Positions 242 to 32,713 of a stretch of 38,923 nucleotides of DNA are shown here, one piece after another. This stretch comes from Macrostomum lignano (taxonomy: Eukaryota): assembly GCA_002269645.1 (NCBI GenBank), contig NIVC01004661.1:1-38923 (forward strand), written 5' to 3'. Under the pieces are notes generated by a model that was not told where the DNA came from, searched no databases, and saw only the letters and a program-made list of their open reading frames with translations. Positions within the stretch are counted from its first letter, which is position 1, and every line of letters starts with the position of its first letter. The translations under genes and the position numbers were made by a program.

Positions 242-2031
242 TTGAACCGACATCTCGAAACGACTAGATGTGGTCGCTGCTCATCTGAATCGTCTGGAGC
301 CTTCGCGCCTCCGAGAAACGCACGAGAGGCGCTTCAGTTTCTTGCGGTCGGTGGTAAGTATGTGAAAGTTTTTTTGAACCCAAACCTTTTTCCACGAACC
401 GCAAATGAGAAGGAGTTCAAACGTATTTGCGGTCTTAGTTATAGTGATTTCGATAGCTTCTCAGAAATGTTACCAGAAGTATCTCGCCTTCGTATTTTGA
501 CAAAGCCGTCTCGAATATTTTTGTACCTGAAGAAGCTTCGCCAAGGTTGCAGCTTTCAATCATTAGCTTTCAATTTCAACATTTCTGCCCAAAGAGCATG
601 CGACATTTTTAGGGAGATTGCCAAGGAGCAGTACCTACGGGATCCATATCAACCGAGGTCGATAGCGTCGACTCCGATTCAGACTCTGCTTGAGGAAAAT
701 GTAGTACGCGATCAATTTATTCTCGGTGTATTTCACACACTACTCAAAGGCAAGAAGCTTGTTCTTCTAGTGGGTGATCATACTTACTTTTATCTCCCTA
801 AGAGCAGCTCACACCACACGAAAATTCGAACTTACTTTTCCGGCAAGAAAATGAATGTGAACAAAAAATGGCGGTTGTCAACAGTAGAGGAAAAGTTATC
901 TACACCGCTCCCCTTACCGCCGCTATCTCGCCAACAATGGGCGATGGGAATTTGACTGCAATGCAAGTTGACATGGAGGCTGAAGGACTAATAGAGCCCA
1001 CTTTGTTGCGCATTCTATGCTCTGTACAGAAAGATTATCACGGTATTGGCATTTTCGACAAAGGTTACAGCCACCAGCTTTGTTCACCAACTTCGGTTAA
1101 CTTCCGCGACTTTATAGAGACTAATAGTAAAGGCTGCACGACGCTTCTATTTCCGACCAGTCCAGGTGACCGAGTTCTAAACGAGCAGTTTGAATTTGTA
1201 AATAATGAGGCTCCTGTTGGTGACCGATCAATACCAGGAAAGCTTACATCAATCGAAGCAAATACAAGTCGCTGGGCTACGCTTTTCCGTTATCTCGTAG
1301 AATGTAGCTTTGCTGCAATCAAGCAAGACAAATGCATAAATGAGCGACAGGAGCCGTACCAATGGCTACATGCCCCAGAGTTTACCGAACGCAGCCGGTT
1401 CGGTGTTGTTATTGAAAACCCCATGGCAAAATTCAACCGTTCGCATCCAGGATTTCAAGCTACAAGGAGTCTGCCGCCGTCATGGTCAGATTGCTCCATG
1501 TTCGAATATGGACGGAACTTTGCTAAACGTCTTTTCATTGCGAATGAGCTAGACGAAATTGAGCAACTTGAGTACAATTGCGATTTGACTCGAATACCAA
1601 CGAGTTCTACCCGAAAATGGACAGCAGTGGATCCCCTGGACCCTGAAAGTTCAGGGTTCCCCAGCGTTGACGAAAGAAATCTGGAAGAGCTTAGCATCGG
1701 CCCATACCACGTTCTTCAGTCAAAACGCTACATCGAAAACGTCAGAGTTCATGAGGTGCTCAGTAGCTACGCTGGAGACTCGTGGCGCGATTTCGAATTG
1801 TTGATTTCTGAACTGCCAAGCCATTTAAAATGCTGGAAGTTTCATCAGCGAGCGCCACCAAAGGGGTGGAGCAGTAAGTTTGGAGAATGGAGGCCATCTT
1901 GGATATATTTAGCCGTTCTTCATTCCCGTCATCGGTCAAAAACTTACCGAGTTGTCCTTCGTGTTTGCGAAACTGCAAGCGGTAACCGATTCGGATTTCG
2001 TGACTCATGGCTGCTGCGTCTGCATGAGTAG
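242..2031 (+). pseudogene. PIF/Harbinger-ISL2EU-like DDE transposase (DDE_Tnp_4 type), frameshifted at ~850-867 and truncated by the Polinton at 2026
   Basis: ORFs 242-955 and 868-2031 join. HTH segment (CGLSYSDF..IFLYLKKLRQGCSFQSLAFNFNIS), DDE-type motifs GDHTYFYLPKSS, GIFDKGY and EANTSRW..R..VE, and the SRHRSKTYRV motif that usually precedes a C-terminal SWIM finger. The stop codon lies inside the Polinton TIR. Family recognised from motifs, no database search. Confidence 0.7.
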
Positions 2032-2334
2032 TATAGAAAAAGACGCTTCTAGACCCAGAGCACTTTTTTAATGACCGTTTTAAGGGTCTAGAGGGGGGAC
2101 ACGGGGGGTAAATAAAAAAACACATCTAAACACCCTTAACACATCTAATCACCCATAATCACCCCTAACAATAAAAATCACTTCCCAACACTTCCAAACA
2201 CTCCCCAACACCCCCCTCGCGTCCCCCCTCTTAAGACCTTACAAACGGTCATTAAAATAAGGTCTGATCTAGAAGCGTCTTTTTCTATACTACTACTCTA
2301 TAACCCCTTGCCCGCGCCGCAGGCGCGAAGGGTC
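2027..2334 (+). repeat. Left terminal inverted repeat of the Polinton
   Basis: Reverse complement of 20697-21003 except 4 substitutions and 1 indel by manual alignment. Confidence 0.97.
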
Positions 2335-2351
2335 TTTTTCTGTTACTAAAA

Positions 2352-2666
2352 ATGACCCGAGTTTACACCTTTTCTGTTAGTGATACTTTTGAGACTGTTG
2401 CTAAAAATGCAGAGATAATAAAACAACATATTTTGAATGGAATAATTGATGAAGTTTATTTAAAATATGACGACAAGCACGACCTAAAACTTTATCCATT
2501 AGAGCTAGATGAGATGTATGATTTAGAACAAGAGGGTGAGTTAATATTTCAACTTGGAGATTATTTAAATTCGGATGATTGGGAGGTTAGATCAACAGAT
2601 TCCGAATCAACAAATAGTTCATATGAAACCAGTGATTCAGAGAATGAAAGTGAAATTTTTATGTGA
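2352..2666 (+). CDS. Polinton accessory protein, small acidic, unknown function (104 aa)
   Basis: Intact ORF right after the left TIR, TAAAAATG start context shared with other element genes, D/E/S-rich C-terminus. Confidence 0.6.
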   Translation: MTRVYTFSVSDTFETVAKNAEIIKQHILNGIIDEVYLKYDDKHDLKLYPLELDEMYDLEQEGELIFQLGDYLNSDDWEVRSTDSESTNSSYETSDSENESEIFM

Positions 2667-2682
2667 AAAAAATATTTAAAAA

Positions 2683-2907
2683 ATGAACTATTATTCTATA
2701 ACAGAAACGACATTTATTGTGAAAAATATATATAAAAAAATGAAGGTAAACTATTCCTACATCGGAAATGTGCCGATTAATGAACTTAATGAAAATTTAA
2801 GTTTGATAACAGTTGAACAAATGTCAATAATAATATTAGTAACAATTATAGTAATAATATTGTTTTTGTTTGTTATAAAAAATTTACTACCATGTTGTCT
2901 TAAGTAA
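2683..2907 (+). CDS. Small single-pass membrane protein (74 aa)
   Basis: TAAAAAATG start; hydrophobic IIILVTIIVIILFLFVI followed by a short Cys-Cys tail. Confidence 0.5.
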   Translation: MNYYSITETTFIVKNIYKKMKVNYSYIGNVPINELNENLSLITVEQMSIIILVTIIVIILFLFVIKNLLPCCLK

Positions 2908-2917
2908 CTGTTTGAAC

Positions 2918-4528
2918 TTAGTTCGCAGACATTATCTGGTTCTCATAAAAAGAACCCAATATTTCTTCACCATCCTTATCAGCAATTATATAGGTTGTAG
3001 GGTTTGTATTTAAAACTTTACTGATGGTAAATTTCTCACTTATTTTCCAATATCCTTTTCTTCCCTTTTCAAACTTATCTTTCCATTTATAGATATAAAC
3101 AGAATCACCAACCTTAAAACCTATAGTTTTCTTTTTTTCAAAATCTCCAAAAGTAACCCTAACGTTTTCAGGATTGTTATAAGCTTGTTGAGGAGTCATC
3201 TTTATCGCCGAATGATATGAATTATTATAATCTTTCACTACGTCTGGTAATATTTTTACCCATTTTTGGTTACCATTAAGACTAAACTGAAACCACAATT
3301 TCTTACCTAAAGTTCTATTAAATCTTTCTATTAATGCGTTTTTACTCTCTCCATAAATAGAATAAATTTTATTAATATACTCCCCATTCGCGTCCTTTTT
3401 CCTTTCTTGTCCTTTTTCAAAATGATATAATTTATACATATGAGGATTGTAAAATTCTTTTCCTTCGTCAACACACAACCTTTCACTTTTTTCTCCAAGA
3501 CTTCTAAAAGCAGCAGCAACATCCTCTCCCTTTTTGGATTTTAAAGGAACAGCCCACGCGTATCGAGTAAAACCATCTAATATGGTTAAGATATATTTAT
3601 ATCCTCTTTCGTTCGGCATCGACATTAAATCAGCATACCAAATTTCATTCTTTTTGAAGTTCATGATTTTTCTATAAAATTTAGGTTTTCGATATTCTTT
3701 ATGAAGAATCTTTGCCTCATCAGAACTTAACCCGCCGCCACTTAACAACAAACACTCAACACAATTATTTCCATGTTGATTATAATTAATTCCTAAACCA
3801 AATTTAACTTTAGACTGCAAGATCTTTTTAACCATCCACCTAGTTAATTTTTGACCTACCGATAATCCCTGCAAGTTATCTAATCCTTGAATCATTTTTT
3901 GATCGGCTTCATGTTTTAATCTTAATGCTTCCTCGGGTGTGTTCTTATCAGCATCTCTGTATGCTAAGTCATGATAGTATGCTAACCAATCAATTCCATT
4001 TATGGGAATTGAATCGGCTTTTGGGGTGTCATCAGGATTTAATCTCAAATCTAAGCGAGTGCCGGGTAGTTTACCCTCAATCTTTCGAAAGAGGCTGGAG
4101 CACACCTTAAGCGGCGATAATTACCGCCCATCTCCGTCTGCTCTCTGAACCTTCTCCTTATATTTAAAATACTTAGGAGCTTGGCTGCGCATTGCCACCG
4201 TGTCTTCAAGCTTTTTACCTTTGGGAAGAGGAGTTACCTCTGTTCCTTCAAAAGATTTCTCAATTGAAGTGGTACTTGAAGCAGTATGACGGGTTTCACG
4301 CAATTTGGAGATGTCGCCACAAATAGTGACTAGCAAGGACATTGCCTTCCTCACTCAGGCCACGGGTTAACCTGTGAAGTTCATTGATGGTAGGTGTAGT
4401 TCCCCTGTATATTTACCAGTAGTAAAGATTGGTGGTAAGCTTGTTAATCCTTTTTGAACATCTAACAATCCTCCTTCAAACACTATTTGATCGTTCCGAA
4501 GGAACGCGAACTTCGTTCGGTTGCTCAT
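2918..4528 (-). CDS. Parvovirus-type phospholipase A2 fused to retroviral-like (RVE) integrase; exons 4370-4528 and 2918-4066 split by a group I intron (~435 aa spliced)
   Basis: Splicing gives ELHLPSMNFTG|PGTRL...PINGIDWLAYYHDLAY (PLA2 Ca loop and HD dyad). Integrase motifs WYADL, ILDGFTRYAWAVPLK, CVDEGKEF, IERFNRTL and a C-terminal KVGD..FEKG..GSFYE domain follow. TAAAAATG at 4528; both exons in frame. Confidence 0.9.
4067..4369 (-). ncRNA. Group I self-splicing intron, subgroup IC1 (303 nt)
   Basis: P AAATTGCGTGAAA (4306-4294), Q AATGCGCAGCC (4193-4183), P3 CATCTCC/GGAGATG (4313-4307 / 4135-4129), P7 GAGCA/TGCTC (4143-4139 / 4102-4098), P5abc with GAAA loop and A-rich bulge, P6, P8, P9 GAAA loop, and P1 CAGGT/GCCTG with the U.G wobble at the splice site. 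Removal restores the conserved NFTGPGT. Confidence 0.93.
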
Positions 4529-5076
4529 TTTTAATAGCCATAAAAATACATGATAGCACCAATTGTTTTGCAAACTCTTCAATGGTTGGTTGTTGAACTT
4601 TTTTATAGCGATTATCTACGCTAGTTAAGTATCTTTTATTTCTCCAATTTTCAGACTTTTTAATCTGATCATCGTCTTTGTAACTAAATGAAGAAGCAGG
4701 AATGAAATGATCAATATCTAACTTTCCAGTATAATTTTTGAACATAATAATTTCTTGTGAAATTTAACCAATCAAAAAAGAATTCTTTTGTGCAACCAAG
4801 ATATGAGATATAGTCCTTGTCATTAAAATTTTTCAACGCCCAATTTATTCTATTTCTAATTAAAACAATATGTTTGTAATTATCATCAGTGTGATACTTA
4901 TTTTTTCTATATTCATTCCATTTATCTTTATTGTTTTTTATCCAAATAGCAGATGAGGTATTATGACAAGATCGACAATCATTTCTAAATTTTTTTGAAT
5001 CATTTCTCCAAAAATAAAATTCTTTCGTCATCGGTTTTTCTTGTTTACACTTAGTACAAATCTTATTAGTTTCCAT
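4476..5076 (-). CDS. Zn-finger + HNH endonuclease (NCLDV/Polinton type), frameshift at ~4745
   Basis: CTKC..CRSC finger, YLGC..F..W motif, IDHFIPASSF..ENWRNKRYL..DN HNH-like core, split over ORFs 4711-5076 and 4476-4745. Confidence 0.75.
4492..4519. other. GC-rich double-hairpin element
   Basis: CGTTCC-GAA-GGAACG then CGAAC-TTC-GTTCG. Confidence 0.8.
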
Positions 5077-5099
5077 TTTATAAAAAATAAATTTAACAA

Positions 5100-5771
5100 T
5101 TAAACTCCAGTATGTCCAGCAGCTTTCGCAGCAGCTAAAACAAGTTTTCGCGGTGTTTTAAATCCATCACCAACAGCTGGTTTGTTATTTATAGAATTAA
5201 CAATCCATTTATACAAGCTGGTATTTTTAACAGCTCCTCCTAACTCATCATAAAAAATTCTAGCACTTATTAATTCATCCCTAGTATATAAATCGGGGTT
5301 AAATTTTACCCTAGGGTTCGTAATAATATTAAATGCTCCGCCCAATTCTCTATATAGTTCATTTCGATCTTTAACAACGTTACCAATTCGATAATTACCA
5401 CCACCTAAATCTGTCACAGCAATACTAGTTGGTGCAGGTCTCGGATATTGATCAACTCCACCCCTAATCTCTTCACGTCTAATTTCTGCAACTCTAAATA
5501 TTGCTTGATCAGTCTCATAAGCAGGCGGCTCATCCAAAATTTCATCCTCTTTTGGCTCCGTATTTTTAGCAATTTTTTCCAGAAGATCTTTATCTGTTTT
5601 TTCTAGTTCACTAATTTTCCCAGTAATAGGATTAACAAAAGGAGCAGCAAATCTTTCACCCGCTAATTGTATTCCTAACTTTCTTTTTTGTAAATTTCTA
5701 ACAAAATCAGAATATCTTTGCTTCTCTTTATAAATCGCTAACTCTCCATCAACGTCCATAAATTGACTCAT
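5100..5771 (-). CDS. Polinton conserved accessory protein (possibly PZ-like), 223 aa
   Basis: Intact ORF with TAAAAAATG start, divergent from MCP, N-terminal helical segment with PFVNPITGKISEL. Family assignment tentative. Confidence 0.5.
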   Translation of the reverse strand: MSQFMDVDGELAIYKEKQRYSDFVRNLQKRKLGIQLAGERFAAPFVNPITGKISELEKTDKDLLEKIAKNTEPKEDEILDEPPAYETDQAIFRVAEIRREEIRGGVDQYPRPAPTSIAVTDLGGGNYRIGNVVKDRNELYRELGGAFNIITNPRVKFNPDLYTRDELISARIFYDELGGAVKNTSLYKWIVNSINNKPAVGDGFKTPRKLVLAAAKAAGHTGV

Positions 5772-5805
5772 TTTTTAACATAAAAAACTTTTTTAACTTA
5801 AAAAA

Positions 5806-7277
5806 ATGGCTGAAACAAAAACTATGTGGAGTGATAAATTTCATTTCAAAAAGCACCGACAGTATATTAATGAGGTCAGAGCAAGAGATTTAAATTATAC
5901 CCTACCAACAAGTGATAATTCAAATAACTTTACTACTGGAACGGTAACTTTTGACATCGGCGCAACCAACACTATATTGGATATGAAAAATGCGTTTTTC
6001 CGCGTTAGATGGTTGTATACTAGAAATGATGGAACTGCTCTTGCAGCCGGAGATATCGCAGATCGATCCGGAATAATAATAGAAAATGATTGGTTTTATA
6101 AATGTTTTTCCCAAGCTCAACTAACTGTTAATGGTGCTGAGGTTGAGACATCATCAAACCCCGCAGAGATTAATGGAGTTTTGAAACATTTAAATTATAC
6201 TTATTTATCAAAACAAGTTGGTGATAATGTTGGGTGGATGCCGGATAAAGGTAACGGTCAAGCAGTAGTTTTCCCTAATGTACAAAACGCAGCCGGTGCA
6301 GATACTGCAGCGCTAATTGTTTACCTTAATACAAACATAGTTCCAGTTGTAACCACTATGACTAATACAAAAGATATTAATACTGGTTTTATAGATCGTC
6401 AGAATAAATTCCCAGTCGCGGTTTTAACCACAGCAACAGCATATGAGCAGGACTTTTCAATCTTTCCACTATTTGGGTTCTTCTCACCAAATCGGGTATG
6501 GAAAGGATTAAAATTTGGGATACAGTTGCAAATATCTGGTGGATATCAGCCTAGGATACTTTATGGAACCTCAATTTCAACCGATATAGCAGTTCGTATA
6601 GATTCAATTCAATTAGTCGTACCAACTATTGAGGTAACAGCCCCACTTTTAAAACACATCGATAATCAGTTAACGCATGATCAGGAAATATTTTATTTGA
6701 ATCGTCGACATTTTATGCGAACCATTAATAACAATCAGGATTCATTCCAGTGGCAAATACTGACATCAAAACGTCGGGTGAGATATATTTTTGTTTGGTT
6801 TAAGATAACAAATAGAAGGAGTAAAAGAGCAAATGGGGATTTATATTGGCTTCAATCCGGTGCCATAGCAGCACAAGCAGCCACCGCAACAGACAATGCG
6901 GCTGCAGCTATTAACGAGTTTAATGTTCAGAATATCCGCCTGCAGGTTGATGATCAATATTATCCGGTTAAAGATCCTCTAATCTAAATATTGCAAATAA
7001 TAATGTTAATGATTTTATAAAATATTATCAAGATTATGCCAAAAATGAAGCGTATGCCGTCCCTCAGTACACACCCACAGAGTTTCTAAACATTCATCCA
7101 GTGGTTGTTTATGATCTAACGGCACAGAAAGAAAACGTAGCCAATATTGGACTTAATTATATGTTAGAGATTAATAAAACCGGTAATCAGGCACTTGACG
7201 CCCACGTATTGTTTCTAGAGGAATATATGTCAATTGCTAAAGCTGATGGCACGATTGTTAGGGACGCGCCGCTGTAA
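5806..7277 (+). CDS. Major capsid protein (double jelly-roll), -1 frameshift at ~6979
   Basis: TFDIG..ILDMKNAFFRVR, DWFYKCFSQAQLTVNGAEVE, RYIFVWFK and NIRLQVDDQYYP; continues in another frame as ..HPVVVYDLTAQKE..VRDAPL* to 7277. Position next to ATPase and penton. Confidence 0.88.
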
Positions 7278-7303
7278 GCGGCGCAGGTCTCCGACCGTCG
7301 CCC
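7261..7303. other. GC-rich double-hairpin element at the MCP stop codon (possible terminator/processing signal)
   Basis: GCGCCGCT-GTA-AGCGGCGC then GGTC-TCC-GACC, closed by GAC/GTC. Confidence 0.75.
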
Positions 7304-7326
7304 CTATTTAAATTATTTCTTTAAAA

Positions 7327-8114
7327 ATGGTAAAGGCAAAACACGATAAGATATTTCCAAATGATCCTTTTCTTTGTTTAGTAATGGGGGATCAGGTAAA
7401 GGAAAAACACACTTTGTTTACGATTTAACAACAGATGGAATGTTAGACTATAATAATTTAATAATTTATACTAATAAACCTAGAATAAAATATTATGAAT
7501 TTCTTAAACATGGATTAAAAAACAAATTAAAAAAAGATGTCTTGTTTAGAATGTTAAGAGCATATGAGCAATATGAGGATGATGACGAACCGCGATTTAA
7601 TCTAGCAGACATTGAGGATTTATGTAAAACAATGGCACAACAGCCAGAAAACATCACCGATCGCCCCGAAGGGTCGCGGACTTCGTCCGATCGCGCCCCA
7701 ACTGTTAGAGTATCAACCCGATTAGCCTATGATCAAATTCCAAAACATGATAAAACACTAATTATTTTTGATGATTGTATTAATGACGGTGATCAAGAAT
7801 TGCAAAAGGAAATTTTTGTTAGTGGTAGAGGAGATGGAATTGGAGCTTTTTATCTAACACAGTCTTTTAGAGAATTAGAATCGATTATAAAAAAGAATGC
7901 AAGTTGTTGTGTAATGTTTGATTTAGATAATTATGATTTACAAAATATTCACGCGAGATTTAATCCCGGATTGGATGCAAAACCATTTAAAAGTATGTGT
8001 AAAAAAATTTGGGATGATAGCCAATACAAACATATTTATATCAATCCGAGGTTAGAAAGGAAAAATCGAATCTTAACAAATTTGATAAAAGAAGATAATG
8101 AGGAAGAAGAATAA
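7327..8114 (+). CDS. FtsK-HerA/A32-like packaging ATPase, -1 frameshift at ~7389
   Basis: Walker A GGSGKGKT, Walker B LIIFDD, R....I..FYLTQS. True start MVKAKHDKIFPNDPFLCLV at 7327 with TAAAAATG context. Confidence 0.92.
7657..7694. other. GC-rich double-hairpin element inside the ATPase gene (30-bp in-frame)
   Basis: CCGATCGC repeated 30 bp apart around CCC-GAA-GGG and GGAC-TTC-GTCC. Confidence 0.8.
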
Positions 8115-8128
8115 TTCCCACTATAAAA

Positions 8129-8914
8129 ATGACTACAAATTTAAATACTATAAAACAATTGGTAGATCGAACTAATTCAAAATTTAGTACAACATTACAG
8201 TTTATAATGACAACCAGCGAGCAACGGATTCAATTGCGCGATCCATTACAACTTGATCAAAGCCTAAGTTATCAAATAGGTTTAATACTATTTTCGGTTT
8301 TCAACATGCCTCAATTAATTAATGCAACAAATAATCAATTTAGATATTCTAAAGATTCCGGAGCCAATTGGACAACATTTAGCGTTAACCCAGGAGCGTA
8401 TAGCTATACTGATTTGAATGCTTATATAGAAGGAGAATTAACAACTAATGGTGATTGGGTAGCAGGAGCAATTGTTATAGGTGTTGATTTACCGTCTGGC
8501 AGATTCACACTATCACTAGGATCCGGATATCAGGTTGATTTCACAATTGCAAATTCACTCAGAACCATACTTGGATTTAATTCCCGAATAGTTACCACAT
8601 CAAGCACCGGTGATACAGTTGGAAATATAGAGGGTGGAGTAAATACAATTAATATAACAACCGACATATCAAACGGTGGTTATATAACAGACGATAACGG
8701 AGTTTTGGTTCAACGTGGAATTATTTATTCAATCCCATTTCTTGCTGTTCCAATTGGAGAGAAAATGATTGTATCACCTCAAACCCCAATATATTACCCA
8801 TTAAATCAATATAATGTTCAATCAATTTATATTAGGATTGTAGATGAAAGCGATAGATTAATAAGTTTTGGTGGGCAGTCAATAACAATAATTTTACGTA
8901 TAAAACAGGTTTAG
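8129..8914 (+). CDS. Minor capsid protein (penton, single jelly-roll)
   Basis: PLQLD..YQIGL, PGAYSYTDLN, LRTILGF, and C-terminal PIYYPL..QSIYIRIVDESDRLISFGG..IILRIK typical of Polinton pentons. Confidence 0.85.
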   Translation: MTTNLNTIKQLVDRTNSKFSTTLQFIMTTSEQRIQLRDPLQLDQSLSYQIGLILFSVFNMPQLINATNNQFRYSKDSGANWTTFSVNPGAYSYTDLNAYIEGELTTNGDWVAGAIVIGVDLPSGRFTLSLGSGYQVDFTIANSLRTILGFNSRIVTTSSTGDTVGNIEGGVNTINITTDISNGGYITDDNGVLVQRGIIYSIPFLAVPIGEKMIVSPQTPIYYPLNQYNVQSIYIRIVDESDRLISFGGQSITIILRIKQV

Positions 8915-8924
8915 TACTGTAAAA

Positions 8925-9134
8925 ATGGGTAATCGAACAACATGTTCGCGTGCAAAGCACGATAATAATAATAATTTAATAAAAAAACAATCAGAAAAAG
9001 TTAAAAAAGCTGAAGATAATTACGAACTAGAACTAGCAAAATTAAGGCAGTTACAAGCTGATAAAATAAGAAAGGAATTGTTAAAACCCACACCTACGAA
9101 ACTAACTAAAACCAAGAGTTTTTCAGGAACATAA
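8925..9134 (+). CDS. Small basic protein with possible N-myristoylation motif (69 aa)
   Basis: MGNRTT (MGxxxT); TAAAAATG start; packed between penton and protease. Confidence 0.5.
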   Translation: MGNRTTCSRAKHDNNNNLIKKQSEKVKKAEDNYELELAKLRQLQADKIRKELLKPTPTKLTKTKSFSGT

Positions 9135-9135
9135 A

Positions 9136-9576
9136 ATGACCATGACGTGGGATGATTTTAAACAAAGATATGGAACAGACACAACAAGCAATATCGAATT
9201 AACAAATTGGGCGAGGCAGTTAAAAATAAAACCATTCAGATGTGTTATGCGAGATGAGATCAAAGACTTACCACAATATGGATGTTTCATTGTTAATATT
9301 GAAACAACAAAAGAAAATGGTGTTCATTGGTCAGCAGTTTATTCAAAACCAAAACTTGTTTATTTTTTTGATTCATACGCGCTTCCTCCGTTACAGGAAA
9401 TAAAAGACAAATTTAATCATACTAAAAATCGTTTATGTGGAGATCATCACGAACAATTTCAAACCTTTGATAAAAGTTATTGCGGGCAAGCGGCGTTGTA
9501 TTTTTTATATCGACTTTCGAATGAAGCTCGTGTAAACCCCGAAGTATTTAAGACTATTTTAGACTCTATAAAATAG
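9136..9576 (+). CDS. Adenain-like cysteine protease
   Basis: GVHWSAV, YFFDSYALPP and Q..DKSYCGQ give the H-D-Q-C catalytic arrangement. Confidence 0.93.
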   Translation: MTMTWDDFKQRYGTDTTSNIELTNWARQLKIKPFRCVMRDEIKDLPQYGCFIVNIETTKENGVHWSAVYSKPKLVYFFDSYALPPLQEIKDKFNHTKNRLCGDHHEQFQTFDKSYCGQAALYFLYRLSNEARVNPEVFKTILDSIK

Positions 9577-9585
9577 ACAGTAAAA

Positions 9586-20553: not shown

Positions 20554-20651
20554 CATTCCATTTAGACCAGATTTTAGACCAAATTTTTGAAAACGAAAAC
20601 CAAAACGATAGTCTAGTTTTGTTTGGTCTAAAATCTGGTCTAAATGGAATG
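20554..20651. repeat. Perfect 30-bp inverted repeat with 38-nt spacer, subterminal
   Basis: CATTCCATTTAGACCAGATTTTAGACCAAA (20554-20583) is the exact reverse complement of 20622-20651. Confidence 0.92.
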
Positions 20652-20696
20652 TTGGGTGGGTAGGTGAGCTGACTATAAATAGCTTCTATTCTTTCC

Positions 20697-21003
20697 GACC
20701 CTTCGCGCCTGCGGCGCGGGCAAGGGGTTATAGAGTAGTAGTATAGAAAAAGACGCTTCTAGATCAGACCTTATTTTAATGGCCGTTTGTAAGGTCTTAA
20801 GAGGGGGGACGCGAGGGGAGTGTTGGGGAGTGTTTGGAAGTTTTGGGAATGATTTTTATTGTTAGGGGTGATTATGGGTGATTAGATGTGTTAAGGGTGT
20901 TTAGATGTGTTTTTTTATTTACCCCCCGTGTCCCCCCTCTAGACCCTTAAAACGGTAATTAAAAAAGTGCTCTGGGTCTAGAAGCGTCTTTTTCTATACT
21001 ACT
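20697..21003 (-). repeat. Right terminal inverted repeat of the Polinton
   Basis: Ends in ...TTTTTCTATACTACT and matches the left TIR. Confidence 0.97.
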
Positions 21004-22110
21004 GAGGACAGAGAAGTATAAAAATGAGAAATGATCGGTACGTTCGCGCTTTTGAGGCTTCCGAATGCTTATATTCAATCAAAAACCCTTCCTGCAATGT
21101 TTCTCTTCCCAATCTCTGCACAGTTGGGCGGCATTAGATTGGAAAATTGGGGCTGCATTTCCAGTGCCTGCCGAAACAGCGGTCTGGGAATACAAAAGCC
21201 AGGCGCCCTGGCACACCTGGCTCCATCCCCTCCGACCGTCAATGCTTCTTTTCGTCTGCCTGTTCTTAAAGTTCAGGGATTGAGGGCTCGGTGCGGCGGG
21301 GGCATGATGCACTCGAATCACCGAAGCGGTTGCTGAATTTGTGTAACATTTTCCCCCTGCCTCTCCAGCCTTCCCTTGCACAATCGCTTTTACCTTGTGA
21401 GAGAAACAGCGGGATTCATCGGGCCCAGTCGAGGTTAAATAAACTGGGATTCAATACAGCTGGCTTGGCTTGTCTCCATCCATTTGCATCGCGGGGCCCA
21501 AAGTAATGAGCAATAAATAATTGAACTAGCCGTTATCATGAAGATTTCAGAATAACTTAGGTATTACGGACTCAGCATATTTTATATATCTCATGGAATA
21601 ACTGGGCTCAGAGGGCTCGAGATGTTGACGAGTCTCGAGCACACCTCTCGAGACCTCGCGACCCGCTGCCTTGATAAGTAGGGGCTTTCGCCGATCAGTT
21701 TCGCCGCTCTCGTTTGCTCGCCAAGAGGCTGGGCCTAATTCGCGTGAATTTTCTTTAGCGCGCCCCGACGGCAGGGGAAGCATAATTAATTCCTATTAAT
21801 AGCGCCCGAACCGGATTCTCCGAATGCGTTTGACAAAAACTGGCTGAATCTTAGTTTAGCTCATACATAGAATTGCAGTCGCGCAATCTGCTGCTAACGC
21901 TGCTGTCGTGTCTTCGGTAATGGTGCAATACATCGATTGATATGCAGGTACACCTTGTCTCTGTAACTGCTTATCTTTGCCATTATTTTTGTCCAAATGA
22001 TCAGCAACTCTCCATCGACAAACCCCAAAGCTCACTTTTATAAAGTCTTTAGCTCAAGCAGATTCAAATACCAATTCCTCCGGTTTTATTCCGTATCTGA
22101 GCTGACTTAC

Positions 22111-25257: not shown

Positions 25258-25549
<292 letters not shown>

Positions 25550-26351: not shown

Positions 26352-27591
26352 CCTCTGCTGCTGAACCTTATTATCAACGCTGACGATCTCGGCTACTCGG
26401 CCAGGCGCGACCGGGCCATCCTGCGGCTCCTGGCCGACGGTCACGTGACGGACGCCTCCTTCATGGTCACCGGTTCGGCCTGCCGCTCCGCCGAGCTTCG
26501 CAGCTTTTTTGCTTCAAGACCGACGCCCGGGCTTCATCTGAACCTGACCGAGGGCCGGCCGGTTTGTCCGCCTGGCCAAGTGCCGAGCCTGGTGAACCCG
26601 GACACTGGCCGGTTCCTGGGCAAGCTCGGCTTTCGCGCTGCCCTTTCAGCCGGACAGGTGTCCCGGTCGGACATCCTAGCCGAGGCCGGCGCTCAGTTTG
26701 CCCGATTCGCCGAGCTCTTCGACGGACGGCCGGCCGGTCACGCCGACGGGCACCAGCACGCGCACTCGCTGCCCGGCCTGGCCGCGTCCGCCTTCGCCGA
26801 GGCCGCCGCGGCTGCTGGTGTCCATCGCGTCCGAGTGCCGGCCGAGTGCCGCCTGCCCTGGCTGGATGTCGGCGACGAGGACAACAACAAGACTGTTGAA
26901 ACTGACGGAGAGGCCCAAAGCCAACGGCGACGCTTCCTGACTGACGTATCAAACGACGCGGCTATCGCGGCCAAGCAAGAGTTTGCCTCGGCTGGCCTCA
27001 CCTGGCCCGGTGCCTTCATGGGCCTGTCCAGCATGGGGGCCGAGATGCGGCTGGACAGAGTGGCCCGGCAGCTGGCCAGGCAGCTGAGCCCAGCGCTGAT
27101 TAAGCTGGTGTGTAGTAAATAGATTTTCTAAAGCTTCACGAAGAAAGCTCATAAATATCAAGTGATGCTTCGAGAAAATGAGGGACAAGAATATATATAA
27201 GCCAACAAACATACTTTGCTGCTTCACAACTATTATTATGCCACACGCTGTCATGCACTTAGCATTCTTTTTTCCCATAACTGCCTTTCAGCGGAGCATG
27301 TCAGACGAGCCCGCCGAGCTCTGGTGCGAGTGGATGGTGCACCCCGGCGAGCCCTGCCTGCCCGGAGAGCCTGGCTGCGGCGGCGACCCGGTGGACGAGT
27401 TTGCCTGCTCGTCGGAGCGCCGTCACGAGGCTGATTTTCTTGCCAGTGCAGAATTCGCCCACTTTCTAATGCGACCCTTCGATTGCGAAGCTTTCGCTGC
27501 TGAGCTGCCGTCAGATATTGCCGCTTCTGAGGCTGTGCGGCTGCGGCTGAGTTCATTCCATGACATGCCTCTAGTGACACAGCCTCTTTAA
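26352..27591 (+). CDS. YDJC: YdjC/ChbG-family carbohydrate deacetylase; exons 26352-27107 and 27292-27591, upstream exon not located
   Basis: LIINADDLGYS, GLHLNLTEG, DGHQHAH and EWMVHPG motifs; CAG acceptors at 26351 and 27291, GT donor at 27108, phases consistent. Confidence 0.88.
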
Positions 27592-27904: not shown

Positions 27905-29332
27905 TCAAGCCTCCACCTCATCGTAGCGTTCTGAGTCGCGATGACGTCTGCCGTGTCCTCCACCGCGGTGACGTCTGCCGCGACCTCCACCGCGGTGGCG
28001 ACGCGAGCGATGCCTGCCTGAACGACGCCAGTGGTCGTGGCCGCTCTCAGCGCCGCCCATTGCCTGCTCCATGCTGCCGTCAATCAGGTCCATCATCTGC
28101 GCCAGAAAGTCGTCTTCGACGAGACTCGCCACTTCAACATCTGACTTCATTTCTTTGGCCTCCAGTCCGACGTAGTTCTGCAACAAATTATCAATAGAAT
28201 CGTAGGTCCTTTCGTAACATTTATATACATACGGTAAACTTATGTGCAACTCGCAATACAAACTCAAAAGGAAACGCCTAGCCTTGTTCAGTCTCAGTCA
28301 AAAATACTGGATTCTGAAGAAGCCAGGCCGCAACGTATAAAGTACATTTCATTGGCGCATGGTACGTAACTTCAAGAACCTGAAAGTTTCGAAAATCGAT
28401 TAGAGAGTGATGAGCCGGTACCTTGAACTTGCGCCACAGCCTGCGACTTCCTGACGTCTCCTCGGCAGTGCTCGAGTTGTTCTTGCAGAAGTCCGGCACA
28501 TTGTACAGCTCCCTGTCTTTGATGCCCGAGGTCACGTTGTAGTACTGGTAGTTGCCCATCATGCTGCGGAATCGCCTCTTCACTCGGTAAGCGCCCTTAA
28601 TGGGCACGCACGAGCGGCTGGTGACAACGGAGAACACCTCGGTGGTCAGCGCGCGGCTGGCGTTGCGGTAGCCGTAGGCCGTCACTGGGAGGCTGTTTTG
28701 CCCGGCTCCGTAAAAGTATGGCGAGTACTGCCTGAAGTAGTCTGTAAGAGTTCGGAATTTTTACATAGCGGTACTCATCTATGCTCTACTCTGTCAATCA
28801 GCCTCATTCTGGCGGATTCTGGTGGGGATGGATTCTTACCTGGGATGCAGGGTCTTCTCATCGACCGCCTCAGCTTGAATGTCTTGCACTTGTCCTTGTA
28901 GATGAAGTACGCCTTCTTGGCATTAAAGTCGGCCACGGTTCGGGTGTGGTAGACCCGCTTAGTCTTCTTGCAGTAGGACATTGTGCGGGCGGCCACCTTC
29001 TTGCCAGGGTAATCAAGACCGACCTTGCTGTCGGACTGCGGGGCAGGCGGAGCGATTCTACGTTAAACTAACACATCAATGAATGAACGGGTACTTCTTT
29101 TCCATTTATTGTATTTATAAATCTCCAATTTACATTCACTTACGGCTCGAAATTTAGGGATCAGAAATTTCTTGCTAATGTGGAAGGCGCCCACGCGTCC
29201 CTCCCACTGTGTGGGCAGACAGCAGCCTTTGCCGAGCTCGCCCTTGTCGTCGGCGTAGTCGCCCATCCAGAAGAGGCTCTCCATCGCGCTGGCAGTCGCC
29301 AGCACAGTCAGGAGAAGCACTAGAGTCTTCAT
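27905..29332 (-). CDS. EPDR: Ependymin-related secreted protein, copy A (exons 29144-29332, 28840-29035, 28422-28741, 27905-28177)
   Basis: Signal peptide, CCLPTQWEG, C..P, Y.NVTSGIKD..YNVPDFC; canonical GT/AG introns with consistent phases. Confidence 0.85.
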
Positions 29333-32300
29333 GATTTTGTTGTCTGTTTGCAAATTTAGCTTGACCAATTTTTATCGTCGGAAAAGTTATGCTACAAATG
29401 ACTGTCTTTTATACTGCTTGCAATCTGACAGACGAAGGTCAAAACTTTGCACCCGCTGTCAAAGCGTTTTCCGTTCTAATTTTAGTATTCGTAGGTCTCG
29501 ATGACATGACATTTATTAAAACCTGCGGCTTGAATTTTTAGTGCGTAGAAAAACAGTTTCAGATCAAATTCAAAATAACTTTCTTACAATTTTTTACGAG
29601 TCTCCAGCGGCTAAGCAATTTGCCAGGTAATTTTTTGTCTATCGGACGAAGATCGAGCACATATTCAGAAGTCTTCAATACCGGTAAACAAATGTTTAAT
29701 ACGCATGAAAAATCCTTTAATTTCTCGGGAAGGTTTTAGATTTTCTACATTTTCTATTCTCAAGTTAAACACACAGCGTTTCTATGTACGAGGTACCAAA
29801 GTGTCACGTATTTGGGGTCCGTATTGACTGTGATAACTTTCTCATTCCACTTCAGCCTGACAGACTTCAGTGCGATAAAAATTGATAATTATGCCTTGAA
29901 GGAAGTTATAGCGCTGTCTCTGTTCGGGTGCATATTATAAGCAGATTGGCTCGATGGCAAACGTCTAATGAATTAATCCGAATTGAAAAAGAACTTTTTT
30001 AGTCTCTAGCAGAGACCCATACTTTTTTATTATTCATTTTTCTCTGTCACTGCACAATTTCTTGGGGCCAAAAGTATCGAAAATAATTTTTTGGGACCTT
30101 GTATTTCGAGCTGAGAGAGCATAAATTATGCTTTATTGCATTTAATTAACACCATTTACAGTGTTTTACTGTTGATTTACGAGCTAGCAGACGGCTACTT
30201 GGGCAAGCCGAAAATTTCATAGCAGGCCGATTTTTCAGCCCGAAATGTGCGCCTGAACAGTTAATTGGTTTGGCTGAAATCAATACATTGTATCGCTGCA
30301 CGACGCGAGTAGAGAATGAAAGCTTACATTACCTCGCCTAACTCAGACGGGTAAACAGACATGCAGCCCTCCTTACTTTCATCATGCTCAGCTAGCTGCC
30401 TTGGCCTAATTGGGCAAGAATCGTTTAACAACCTCCTTGTACGAATGATTTCCTTGTACGAATTTCACATTCTGTGGACCGCACGCGAGGAATCGAACCT
30501 AGGGACTCTCGTCGGATCTATAGTCCCCTGGTTGACTTACTTTTTTGGAGTGGCGCATTTTGTATCGACACCCATGTTTGTTACATGTAATACAAATCAT
30601 TTTCAGATAAAACACTATCTTATTGGCCTTAAGAGAGGATAATCTTGGTAGCAAATCGGCTAAAAAATTGTCTATAAACAGTGCATCTTACTTTAAAAAT
30701 CCAAGGGACATTAACTTTGTCATTATGTTGTCATGGATTGAATTAACAATCTAAAGCGCTGGAAAACCCAGTAAAATTTAACTTAGAAACGCTTTAAAAA
30801 ATTGATAGTGCTTATCGTGCTGCATGCAAATTTCATGTACATTGAACCCTTTTCTACTTTATCAAAGTAGCGAGGTTGCTAACGTCGTGTGCCGATACAG
30901 CAGATGCGTCATTGGAAAACTTCTCAATCTTGACAGCTCAGGTTTTCATATACTACACAGACCTCATCAGGCAGCCAGTGACACATGCTGTTACAGTTCA
31001 CGTATCGCGCCACGTCTAAAAATTGTCTCGATAAATTTTCGCCGAATTCTGACCCTCTACGTTCTCTTATAATCAGTAAAAGTCACATGCTATTAGCCAT
31101 GCAAACGTAAACTCTGCGTGGCTCGCTCTCAATCTGATTTATCCGCGTCTCCAGGTCAGCTGCAACTTTATGAAAGTAGCAAAGTTGGCTTGCCTGGAGC
31201 GATAAGAATCTTCAACAACAACCTATGGCCCTTTATAAATACTTGAAACGCAAATAGGAACTTCTTCCAACTTCAACGAGCTGAGCTCTCATAAATTCAA
31301 GCAATTTTAACCCAAGCAACAGCCATGAAGACTCTGGTGCTTCTCCTGACTGTGCTGGCGACTGCCAGCGCGATGGAGAGCCTCTTCTGGATGGGCGACT
31401 ACGCCGACGACAAGGGCGAGCTCGGCAAAGGCTGCTGTCTGCCCACACAGTGGGAGGGACGCGTGGGCGCCTTCCACATTAGCAAGAAATTTCTGATCCC
31501 TAAATTTCGAGCCGTAAGTGAATGTAAATTGGAGATTTATAAATACAATAAATGGAAAAGAAGTACCCGTTCATTCATTGATGTGTTAGTTTAACGTAGA
31601 ATCGCTCCGCCTGCCCCGCAGTCCGACAGCAAGGTCGGTCTTGATTACCCTGGCAAGAAGGTGGCCGCCCGCACAATGTCCTACTGCAAGAAGACTAAGC
31701 GGGTCTACCACACCCGAACCGTGGCCGACTTTAATGCCAAGAAGGCGTACTTCATCTACAAGGACAAGTGCAAGACATTCAAGCTGAGGCGGTCGATGAG
31801 AAGACCCTGCATCCCAGGTAAGAATCCATCCCCACCAGAATCCGCCAGAATGAGGCTGATTGACAGAGTAGAGCATAGATGAGTACCGCTATGTAAAAAA
31901 TTCCGAACTCTTACAGACTACTTCAGGCAGTACTCGCCATACTTTTACGGAGCCGGGCAAAACAGCCTCCCAGTGACGGCCTACGGCTACCGCAACGCCA
32001 GCCGCGCGCTGACCACCGAGGTGTTCTCCGTTGTCACCAGCCGCTCGTGCGTGCCCATTAAGGGCGCTTACCGAGTGAAGAGGCGATTCCGCAGCATGAT
32101 GGGCAACTACCAGTACTACAACGTGACCTCGGGCATCAAAGACAGGGAGCTGTACAATGTGCCGGACTTCTGCAAGAACAACTCGAGCACTGCCGAGGAG
32201 ACGTCAGGAAGTCGCAGGCTGTGGCGCAAGTTCAAGGTACCGGCTCATCACTCTCTAATCGATTTTCGAAACTTTCAGGTTCTTGAAGTTACGTATCATG

Positions 32301-32713
32301 CGCCAATGAAATGTACTTTATACGTTGCGGCCTGGCTTCTTCAGAATCCAGTATTTTTGACTGAGACTGAACAAGGCTAGGCGTTTCCTTTTGAGTTTGT
32401 ATTGCGAGTTGCACATAAGTTTACCGTATGTATATAAATGTTACGAAAGGACCTACGATTCTATGATAATTTGTTGCAGAACTACGTCGGACTGGAGGCC
32501 AAAGAAATGAAGTCAGATGTTGAAGTGGCGAGTCTCGTCGAAGACGACTTCTTGGCGCAGATGATGGACCTGATTGACGGCAGCATGGAGCAGGCAATGG
32601 GCGGCGCTGAGAGCGGCCACGACCACTGGCGTCGTTCAGGCAGGCATCGCTCGCGTCGCCACCGCGGTGGAGGTCGCGGCAGACGTCACCGCGGTGGAGG
32701 ACACGGCAGACGT
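27944..32713. repeat. Inverted duplication: arms ~27944-29333 and ~31324-32713, ~2 kb spacer
   Basis: The arms match as reverse complements including introns, with only a handful of differences seen. Confidence 0.93.

What the first reader, a model, noticed from the sequence alone, without database searches (positions are those of the whole stretch)
4067..4369. A complete nuclear-type group IC1 self-splicing intron inside a protein-coding gene of an animal Polinton/adintovirus
Seen: a 303-nt GC-richer insert splits the PLA2 Ca-binding loop exactly (NFTG|PGTRL). It has P1 (exon CAGGT with IGS GCCTG, U.G wobble), partial P10 (CCCGG/CCGTG), P2.1, P3 (CATCTCC/GGAGATG), P4 (TGCGTG/TGCGCA, covaried relative to the usual TGCGGG/TCCGCA), P5abc with a GAAA tetraloop and A-rich bulge, P6/P6a, P7 (GAGCA/TGCTC, covaried from GACTA/TAGTC), P8 and P9 with GAAA. 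Established: IC1 introns are typical of fungal, algal and protist nuclear rDNA and some algal viruses; in animals group I introns are known mainly from sponge, cnidarian and placozoan mitochondria. Inference: a virus-like element has carried a ribozyme intron into an animal nuclear genome, in an mRNA rather than rRNA context. I am not aware of this being well described but cannot check the literature.
Basis: partly seen in the sequence, partly recalled or inferred. Interest (0 to 1): 0.96.

Follow-up and report, generated by a model that had tools for sequence, protein, structure and literature searches.

The report
Ribozyme intron in flatworm Polinton gene
A real self-splicing-type (group I) RNA intron interrupts the phospholipase-integrase gene of a virus-like Polinton element integrated in a flatworm genome, which appears to be the first such intron reported in an animal nuclear genome, although this copy looks partly decayed.

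Summary
On the minus strand, 4369..4067, there is a 303-nt group I intron: Rfam RF00028 scores 62.1 bits (gathering 50, E 5e-15), and all core helices check out.

- **Position.** It splits a PLA2-like/rve-integrase fusion gene. In 48 of 48 intron-less relatives the two exon matches abut with no residue between them, inside the F-T-G|P-G-T calcium-loop motif.
- **Element.** It is bounded by terminal inverted repeats (2027..21003) and carries a protein-primed PolB, an integrase and a weak A32-type ATPase match, so it is a Polinton/Maverick. The label 'adintovirus' could not be tested.
- **Host.** The flank holds a two-exon gene identical to a Macrostomum lignano protein, so the host is an animal.
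- **Family.** Protein models of several diverged relatives start inside a homologous intron at the same codon boundary. Intron-less members occur in the same 90%-identity clusters, so this is an intron family with presence/absence polymorphism.

Caveats:
- The 3' boundary of this copy lacks the terminal guanosine that defines group I introns.
- The PolB gene is broken and a transposon is nested in the element, so this copy is probably a fossil.
- The IC1 subgroup is supported by architecture only.
- DNA of relatives was not fetched.

Group I introns are already reported in protist Polinton-like viruses. I found no report for animals.

The parts
2027..21003 (.). Polinton/Maverick-type integrated element, TIR to TIR (about 19 kb, about 32% GC against 40-58% in the right flank)
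   Evidence: Inverted repeats I4/I5, 98% complementary; ends read; composition; pPolB, rve integrase and a weak A32 ATPase match
2027..2334 (.). Left terminal inverted repeat. It is itself a foldback: its terminal 27 nt pair perfectly with 2268-2294.
20697..21003 (.). Right terminal inverted repeat
2918..4528 (-). PLA2-like + rve integrase fusion gene, two exons split by the group I intron. Both exons are open reading frames.
   Evidence: Pfam rve 9e-8 and weak Phospholip_A2_4 on exon 2; PFV integrase core in PDB; 458 homologs, most with PF08398+PF00665; intron-less homologs pass both Pfam cut-offs
4370..4528 (-). Exon 1 (53 codons from the ATG at 4528). It ends in the Gly codon GGU, whose U is the 5' splice-site base.
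4067..4369 (-). Group I intron, 303 nt, with no endonuclease gene
   Evidence: RF00028 62.1 bits, E 4.9e-15; bounds from 48/48 homologs; no Pfam hit for the only intron ORF
2918..4066 (-). Exon 2 (382 codons plus stop). It starts with the Pro-Gly-Thr codons. The PLA2 H-D..Y motif lies about 30 codons in; the integrase core covers residues about 138-295.
4356..4374 (-). P1 hairpin: the last five exon bases and first two intron bases pair with the internal guide sequence (U4370.G4360 at the cleavage site). Bases 4361-4365 of the guide can pair with the first five bases of exon 2 (P10, 4/5).
4316..4355 (-). P2 (8 bp) and P2.1 (5 bp) hairpins
   Evidence: MFE fold
4149..4302 (-). P4-P5-P6 domain, including the P5abc three-way extension (about 4203-4282; GAAA loop on P5b, A-rich strand) and P6/P6a/P6b
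   Evidence: (z -2.7)
4098..4143 (-). P7 5' strand, P3 3' strand, P8 hairpin, J8/7 and P7 3' strand (catalytic core). By alignment to the Rfam consensus, the G-C pair next to the bulged A in P7 is kept. P3 5' strand is 4307-4313.
4067..4093 (-). P9 hairpin with GAAA loop (4076-4093) and a 9-nt 3' tail. The two bases before the last can pair with J7/9 (P9.0).
15417..18620 (-). [quoted passage not shown] BROKEN: about four frame changes and at least three in-frame stops relative to intact relatives of about 1150 aa. Outer bounds only.
   Evidence: Pfam Endonuclease_7 and DNA_pol_B_2; representatives; tblastn counts
7374..8114 (+). Candidate packaging ATPase (weak match to poxvirus A32, below the Pfam cut-off)

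Best explanation
A genuine group I intron with IC1-like architecture and no homing-endonuclease gene interrupts the PLA2-like/integrase fusion gene of a Polinton/Maverick element integrated in the Macrostomum lignano nuclear genome. It belongs to an intron family that occupies the same Gly|Pro codon boundary in several diverged relatives of this gene and is present or absent among near-identical relatives.

Proposed working (inferred from group I biology):
1. The gene is transcribed as a pre-mRNA.
2. The intron folds into the P3-P9 core, buttressed by P5abc.
3. The internal guide sequence pairs with the last five exon-1 bases (U.G at the cleavage site) and with the first bases of exon 2 (P10).
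4. A free guanosine bound at the P7 site cleaves the 5' junction.
5. Exon ligation restores the F-T-G-P-G-T calcium loop of the phospholipase domain.

The insertion site is made of the invariant positions of the Gly-Pro-Gly codons, which is typical of mobile group I introns.

In this copy the 3' boundary does not meet the terminal-guanosine rule and the element is otherwise decaying. This copy is therefore most likely a fossil whose second splicing step is impaired, while the family as a whole is or was functional.

Shown here: identity, position, structure compatibility, family distribution, host. Inferred: catalysis, expression, mobility.
For: - RF00028 at 62.1 bits, above the gathering score of 50, E 4.9e-15, full-length model match.
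- All core helices are canonical. P7 has two double-sided changes relative to the consensus and keeps the G-C pair next to the bulged A.
- P2, P2.1, P5abc, P6 and P8 are recovered by an unconstrained fold.
- Both exons are open, and 48/48 homologs join them with no extra residue.
- P10 (4/5) and P9.0 (2/2) fit that same junction.
- Protein models P0003, P0041, P0139 and P0140 begin with 13 residues that match the translation of this intron's 3' end at 12 of 13 positions, counting the start codon.
- P0130 reads through about 180 nt of an intron whose translation matches the translation of this intron's core in two short conserved stretches (by my reading, the P4'/P6 and J6/7-P7-P3' parts) and then differs where P8 and P9 lie.
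- P0008, P0011, P0025, P0032, P0129, P0133-P0135 and P0137 start at the same boundary with a Met codon.
- Intron-less members (P0124, P0131) sit in the same 90%-identity clusters as intron-bearing ones.
- Host: UniRef A0A1I8G0T2 (M. lignano) maps as two exons with a GT-AG intron at 26463-27588.
- Decay: pPolB is broken and a Tc1/mariner remnant is nested in the element.
Against: - The terminal guanosine that defines the group I 3' splice site is not met at the junction in this copy.
- No expression or splicing data exist.
- DNA of relatives was not examined, so there is no covariation test across natural copies, and the state of the 3' end in the closest intron-bearing lineage is unknown.
- The whole-intron fold z-score is only -2.0.
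- Host assignment rests on one flanking gene, whose nearest non-self relatives are bacterial or protist.
- No target-site duplication is seen at the element's ends.
- A long-read assembly error at the boundary cannot be excluded.
Confidence: 0.78

Rival explanations
1. This copy still splices. Either it splices accurately despite the non-canonical 3' end, or it uses one of the guanosines 9-11 nt upstream. Using the guanosine where the Rfam model ends would keep the frame and add three codons inside the calcium loop.
For: The Rfam model ends on a guanosine 9 nt upstream of the junction. The frame stays open through those 9 nt. Both exons are intact. The same 9-nt tail is conserved in the P0003/P0041 lineage with one residue difference.
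Against: Intron-less relatives, including P0124 in the same 90% cluster as P0003, have no extra residues. Three added residues would disrupt the Y/F-x-G-x-G loop. P10 and P9.0 do not fit the upstream site (my pairing check in reasoning on the, 56 sequence). By established group I biochemistry (own knowledge), a non-G terminal base strongly impairs exon ligation.
Confidence: 0.2
2. The insert is a dead, ribozyme-derived insertion in every lineage. It would be a pseudogene marker inherited vertically, never spliced.
For: This element is degraded, and there is no direct splicing evidence.
Against: Exons on both sides stay open over 435 codons and retain PLA2 and integrase motifs. The guide sequence matches both exon ends. 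The intron core is conserved between lineages whose exons are only about 46% identical. Presence/absence within 90%-identity clusters argues for recent gain or precise loss.
Confidence: 0.07
3. The element, or the whole contig, is a contaminant or a chimeric assembly and is not part of an animal nuclear genome. It could, for example, be DNA from a food alga or a protist-borne virus.
For: The element's GC (about 32%) differs from the flank. No target-site duplication is seen. Most relatives come from metagenome assemblies. The flanking YdjC-like gene has bacterial or protist nearest relatives.
Against: Both TIRs are embedded in non-viral sequence on one contig. The right flank carries a spliced GT-AG gene 100%/98% identical to an annotated M. 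lignano protein, an ependymin-family exon, and microsatellites and minisatellites typical of a eukaryotic genome. A nested Tc1/mariner remnant and a broken pPolB indicate residence in a genome.
Confidence: 0.08
4. The 303 nt are removed by the spliceosome as an ordinary nuclear intron.
For: The host uses GT-AG introns.
Against: No GT...AG pair gives the exact in-frame junction required by the homologs (sequence, junction). The insert scores as a full group I intron.
Confidence: 0.02

Closest known systems
Group I introns (RF00028) in Polinton-like viruses of protists (Rhodomonas lacustris cluster C3, Paulinella micropora, Desmodesmus armatus; PMC12220804)
   Same: A short (309-376 nt there, 303 nt here) group I intron with no annotated endonuclease, inside a protein-coding gene of a Polinton-related element integrated in a eukaryotic genome, detected with the same Rfam model.
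   Different: The hosts there are protists; here it is a bilaterian animal assembly. The gene there is a roughly 50-aa ORF upstream of the capsid gene; here it is the PLA2-like/integrase fusion. The element here is a pPolB + integrase Polinton. Sequences could not be compared.
Nuclear rDNA group IC1 introns (Tetrahymena LSU type; domain layout as in PMC2860135)
   Same: Architecture: P1-P2-P2.1, P3-P8 core, P4-P6 with a P5abc extension, GAAA tetraloops on P5b and P9, U.G at the 5' splice site, G-C pair next to the bulged A in P7.
   Different: This one sits in an mRNA of a virus-like element rather than in Pol I rRNA. It is much more compact. The 3'-terminal guanosine rule is not met in this copy. 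Subgroup membership was not tested with a subgroup model.
Group I introns in protein-coding genes of DNA viruses of microbes (phage T4 td type, chloroviruses, mimiviruses; own knowledge; only a marginal 48-nt core match to Brochothrix phages)
   Same: A self-splicing intron placed in a highly conserved coding motif of a viral gene.
   Different: Those hosts are bacteria, algae or amoebae. Many of those introns carry homing endonucleases and belong to subgroups IA/IB.
Animal mitochondrial group I introns (sponge, cnidarian, placozoan, bryozoan cox1/nad5; PMC5360047, PMC4676843, PMC9240083)
   Same: They are group I introns in animals, with patchy presence/absence that suggests mobility.
   Different: Those are organellar and often encode LAGLIDADG endonucleases. 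This one is in nuclear DNA, in a virus-like element, and has no endonuclease.
Adintovirus/Polinton PLA2-like genes (PMC8502044; PMC3671162) and HNH-bearing pPolB2 Polintons (PMC10748475)
   Same: A parvovirus-type PLA2 motif in a Polinton-class element, and a pPolB with an inserted HNH-type nuclease domain.
   Different: In Alpha adintoviruses PLA2 is fused to a pX-like domain; here it is fused to the integrase. Those papers report no ribozyme intron.

Membership tests
Group I intron (Rfam RF00028) | Covariance-model score above the curated gathering score | tested here: met
   62.1 bits against 50; E 4.9e-15; model positions 1-253 of 253; recovered again in a 21-kb scan
Group I intron (Rfam RF00028) | P1 formed by the exon end and the internal guide sequence, with U.G at the 5' splice site | tested here: met
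   7/7 pairs, U4370.G4360
Group I intron (Rfam RF00028) | Conserved core: P3/P7 pseudoknot, P4-P6 stack, P8, J8/7 | tested here: met
   P3 7/7, P4 6/6, P5 5/5, P7 5/5, P8 6/6; core letters match the consensus
Group I intron (Rfam RF00028) | Guanosine-binding G-C pair in P7 next to a bulged nucleotide | tested here: met
   By alignment to the Rfam consensus and pairing
Group I intron (Rfam RF00028) | 3'-terminal guanosine at the 3' splice site | tested here: not met
   At the boundary fixed by 48/48 homologs, P10 and P9.0, the last intron base is not G. Relatives of the P0008 type end with a Met codon.
Group I intron (Rfam RF00028) | Self-splicing activity | not testable with these tools
   No transcript data or biochemistry available
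Subgroup IC1 | P2 plus P2.1 domain | tested here: met
   Both hairpins appear in the unconstrained MFE fold; 8/8 and 5/5 pairs; layout per PMC2860135
Subgroup IC1 | P5abc extension with tetraloop and A-rich strand | tested here: met
   Three-way junction folds on its own, z -2.7; GAAA on P5b
Subgroup IC1 | Placement by a subgroup-specific model or phylogeny | not tested
   Rfam holds one model for all group I introns. No subgroup library was on hand.
Polinton/Maverick | Terminal inverted repeats | tested here: met
   About 308 nt, 98%
Polinton/Maverick | Protein-primed family B polymerase | tested here: met
   Pfam DNA_pol_B_2; up to 87% coverage of the ~1100-1300-aa relatives listed (66-87%), but broken
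Polinton/Maverick | Retrovirus-like (rve) integrase | tested here: met
   Pfam 9e-8; PFV integrase core 1e-6; fold match for a 70%-identical relative
Polinton/Maverick | Capsid module (double and single jelly-roll proteins, maturation protease, packaging ATPase) | tested here: inconclusive
   Only a sub-threshold A32 ATPase match. No PDB or Pfam hits for the other ORFs.
Polinton/Maverick | Target-site duplication (usually 6 bp) | tested here: not met
   The flanks at both TIR ends differ
Adintoviridae | Adenovirus-like hexon/penton, adenain, pX-type core protein | tested here: inconclusive
   Only a weak Adeno_PX match, E 0.01, below cut-off. Nothing else was found.
Parvovirus-type PLA2 domain (PF08398) | Y/F-x-G-x-G calcium loop and H-D-x-x-Y catalytic motif; profile match | tested here: met
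   Motifs are present across the two exons. Exon 2 alone scores 17 bits, below the cut-off. Intron-less relatives score 33-47 bits, above it.

The most novel reading that the evidence does not exclude
A lineage of compact, endonuclease-less group I introns circulates among Polinton/Maverick-type viruses of animals. It self-splices from Pol II transcripts in metazoan nuclei and spreads between elements by recognising, through its guide sequence, the invariant Gly-Pro-Gly codons of the PLA2 loop. That would make it the first nuclear group I ribozyme system in animals.
Probability: 0.35. Interest if true: 0.85.

Novelty: new member of a known kind. Interest (0 to 1): 0.7.

Why it matters
By the literature I could search, group I introns in animals are confined to a few mitochondrial genomes. 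Nuclear ones are known from rDNA of microbial eukaryotes (my own knowledge).

A bona fide group I intron inside a Pol II-type gene of a virus-like element in a bilaterian genome extends the known range of these ribozymes. Relatives that carry or lack it at the same codon boundary add to this.

It makes a long-standing question concretely testable with existing transcript data: can group I ribozymes work in animal nuclei and on mRNAs?

It also flags a blind spot. Routine Rfam annotation with default filters missed the intron, and gene callers on relatives produced truncated proteins that start inside it.

Last, it documents a PLA2-integrase fusion as a widespread gene type of Polinton-class elements.

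Tried and rejected
- **Whole-window Rfam scan at gathering thresholds:** 0 hits. This was a filter artefact, overturned.
- **Other group I introns in the window:** none.
- **tRNA scan:** none.
- **Homing endonuclease in the intron:** none.
- **Phage collection search with the intron:** only a 48-nt core match, uninformative.
- **Capsid, protease and ATPase identification by PDB sequence search and Pfam:** nothing usable, so the 'adintovirus' label stays untested.
- **Ependymin exon search for host confirmation:** no hits.
- **Fold search of the predicted relative structure:** dominated by the integrase, so it gave no independent PLA2 fold match.
- **Spliceosomal removal and an upstream-guanosine 3' site:** considered and judged unlikely (see rivals).

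Left out on purpose:
Exons were searched apart, by reference.

Transparency:
- In one search my script concatenated the two predicted exons in memory only to compute their GC content. Nothing was saved or printed.
- Early in my reasoning I began recalling a model ribozyme's sequence from memory. I stopped and used it nowhere.
- If that counts as the place of a break, I flag it as a slip.
- No contig that I take for human was met.

Full report

Yes. The insert lies on the minus strand. Read that way, exon 1 ends in ...ACAGGU (U at 4370), the insert runs 4369..4067 (303 nt), and exon 2 starts with CCCGGC at 4066.

A covariance-model scan of 3600-4900 gives Rfam RF00028 (group I catalytic intron) at 4379..4076, covering the full model. 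The score is 62.1 bits against a gathering score of 50, E 4.9e-15. A 21-kb scan gives the same hit at E 8e-14 and no second intron, and the rest of the window has none. The first whole-window scan in 'gathering' mode returned nothing. That was a speed-filter miss, so routine pipelines would overlook this intron.

**2. Anatomy**

- P1 7/7, with U.G at the cleavage site
- P2 8/8 and P2.1 5/5
- P3 7/7, P4 6/6, P5 5/5
- P5a, P5b (GAAA loop) and P5c
- P6, P6a and P6b
- P7 5/5 and P8 6/6
- P9 5/7, with a GAAA loop
- P10 4/5 between the guide sequence and the first bases of exon 2
- a 2-bp P9.0 just before the 3' boundary

Relative to the Rfam consensus, two P7 pairs are changed on both sides, while the G-C pair next to the bulged A is kept. 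An unconstrained MFE fold finds P2, P2.1, P3, P4, P5, P5abc, P6a/b and P8 by itself. The z-score is -2.0 for the whole intron and -2.7 for P5abc.

The intron is 45.9% GC and the exons 33.5%. The only ORF inside it has no family match, so there is no homing endonuclease.

P2 + P2.1 plus P5abc is the layout of the IC1 subgroup (PMC2860135). No subgroup-specific model was available, so 'IC1' is an architectural resemblance and not a tested membership.

**3. The gene**

Exon 1 (4528..4370, 53 codons) and exon 2 (4066..2921, 382 codons) are both open. Exon 2 carries a weak PLA2-like match and an rve integrase core. The core aligns to foamy-virus integrase structures.

Exon 2 finds 458 relatives, most annotated PF08398 + PF00665, so the PLA2-integrase fusion is a widespread gene type. 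Intron-less relatives pass both Pfam cut-offs. A predicted structure of the 70%-identical P0122 gives a confident helical N-domain and an integrase fold.

In all 48 relatives that match both exons, the two matches abut with zero residues between them. The closest of these (P0001) reads ...N-F-T-G-P-G-T-R-L... there.

**4. An intron family, not a one-off**

Several relatives' protein models begin inside an intron at the same boundary.
- P0003, P0041, P0139 and P0140 start with 13 residues that equal the translation of this intron's last 39 nt, apart from one residue and the start codon.
- P0130 reads through about 180 nt of intron. Its translation matches the translation of this intron's core in two short conserved stretches (by my reading, the P4'/P6 and J6/7-P7-P3' parts) and then differs in length where P8 and P9 lie.
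- P0008, P0011, P0025, P0032, P0129, P0133-P0135 and P0137 start at the boundary with a Met codon.

The exons of these lineages are only 46-59% identical to the window's. Intron-less members (P0124, P0131) share 90%-identity clusters with intron-bearing ones. That is presence/absence polymorphism, as expected of a mobile or recently lost intron.

The guide sequence reads the last bases of the Gly codon and the Pro-Gly codons. These are positions fixed by the protein motif, a typical group I insertion site.

**5. The weak point**

The 3' boundary is fixed independently by the homologs, by P10 and by P9.0. At that boundary the last intron base is not the guanosine that defines group I 3' splice sites, although the binding site in P7 looks canonical. 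The nearest guanosines lie 9-11 nt upstream, where the Rfam model ends. Using the in-frame one would add three codons that no intron-less relative has.

I cannot tell whether this is copy-specific decay, a lineage trait or an assembly error. I say no more about it than the membership test requires.

**6. The element and the host**

TIRs of about 308 nt (98%) bound 2027..21003. Each TIR is itself a foldback.

Inside are the PLA2-integrase gene, a weak A32-type ATPase match and a protein-primed PolB with an Endonuclease VII/HNH-type domain. That domain resembles the 'pPolB2' Polintons of nematodes, oomycetes and molluscs (PMC10748475).

Against intact relatives of about 1150 aa, the PolB gene is broken by about four frame changes and at least three in-frame stops. 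A GC-rich block with Tc1/mariner transposase remnants is nested in the element. No capsid or protease gene could be recognised. 'Polinton/Maverick' is therefore supported and 'adintovirus' untested. No target-site duplication is visible.

The right flank carries a two-exon GT-AG gene that is 100% and 98% identical to UniRef A0A1I8G0T2 of Macrostomum lignano. It also carries an ependymin-family exon and microsatellites and minisatellites. The window is therefore a flatworm nuclear contig. Contamination or chimerism is unlikely but not excluded.

**7. Mechanism**

The best-supported reading is ordinary group I self-splicing of the pre-mRNA, restoring the phospholipase loop of a protein that probably combines membrane penetration and integration. 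This copy is probably a fossil. Catalysis, expression and mobility are inferred and not shown.

**8. Novelty**

- RF00028 introns have been reported in Polinton-like viruses of protists (PMC12220804).
- Papers that hold both 'group I intron' and 'adintovirus', 'Polinton' or 'Maverick' mention the intron only in reference lists or in other contexts.
- The adintovirus paper mentions no such intron.
- Animal group I introns in the literature are mitochondrial.

This is a new member of a known kind in an unprecedented host setting.

**9. Slips and omissions**

Noticed in passing
window 2027-2334 (and mirror 20697-21003): Each terminal inverted repeat is itself a foldback. The terminal 27 nt (2027-2053) are perfectly complementary to 2268-2294, with a second imperfect inner pair (2066-2108 / 2215-2257). 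The element's ends could therefore form hairpins of about 270 nt.
   Followed up: partly
window 20554-20651: A perfect 30-nt inverted repeat with a 38-nt spacer lies just inside the right TIR. It gives sub-threshold matches to several plant microRNA precursor families on both strands, which looks like a MITE-like palindrome rather than a miRNA.
   Followed up: partly
window 1980-2030 and 21000-21050: No target-site duplication is visible at the element's ends. The left flank is a Harbinger-type ORF pair (212-2028, HTH_Tnp_4) whose reading frame stops right at the TIR, as if the element had landed in another transposon.
   Followed up: partly
window 11000-13000 (1-kb bins of the composition profile): A GC-rich block (43-55% against about 30% around it) in the middle of the element holds overlapping ORFs with Tc1/mariner-type transposase signatures (HTH_Tnp_Tc3_2, DDE_3). 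It is a nested, degraded transposon.
   Followed up: partly
window 15417-18620, minus strand: The protein-primed PolB carries an Endonuclease VII/HNH-type domain ahead of the polymerase core, as described for 'pPolB2' Polintons of nematodes, oomycetes and molluscs. Authors of that work speculated that such a domain came from a group I intron.
   Followed up: partly
window 27944-29333 and 31324-32713: A 1.39-kb inverted duplication, 99-100% identical, with a 1990-nt spacer. Each arm carries an ependymin-family exon. It could be a recent inverted gene duplication or an assembly artefact.
   Followed up: no
window 25258-25547 and 36859-38684: A long (AG)n microsatellite (145 units) and a 23-nt minisatellite of 79 copies lie in the host flank.
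   Followed up: no
window 26463-27588, plus strand: The host YdjC-like carbohydrate deacetylase gene (two exons, 58% GC) has bacterial and protist proteins at about 40% identity as its nearest non-self relatives. This may be an old horizontal acquisition in the flatworm.
   Followed up: no
window 4076-4379 (method note): The Rfam scan in curated 'gathering' mode on the whole 39-kb window returned nothing, although the intron scores 12 bits above the gathering score in more permissive scans. In relatives, gene callers produced truncated proteins that start inside the intron.
   Followed up: yes
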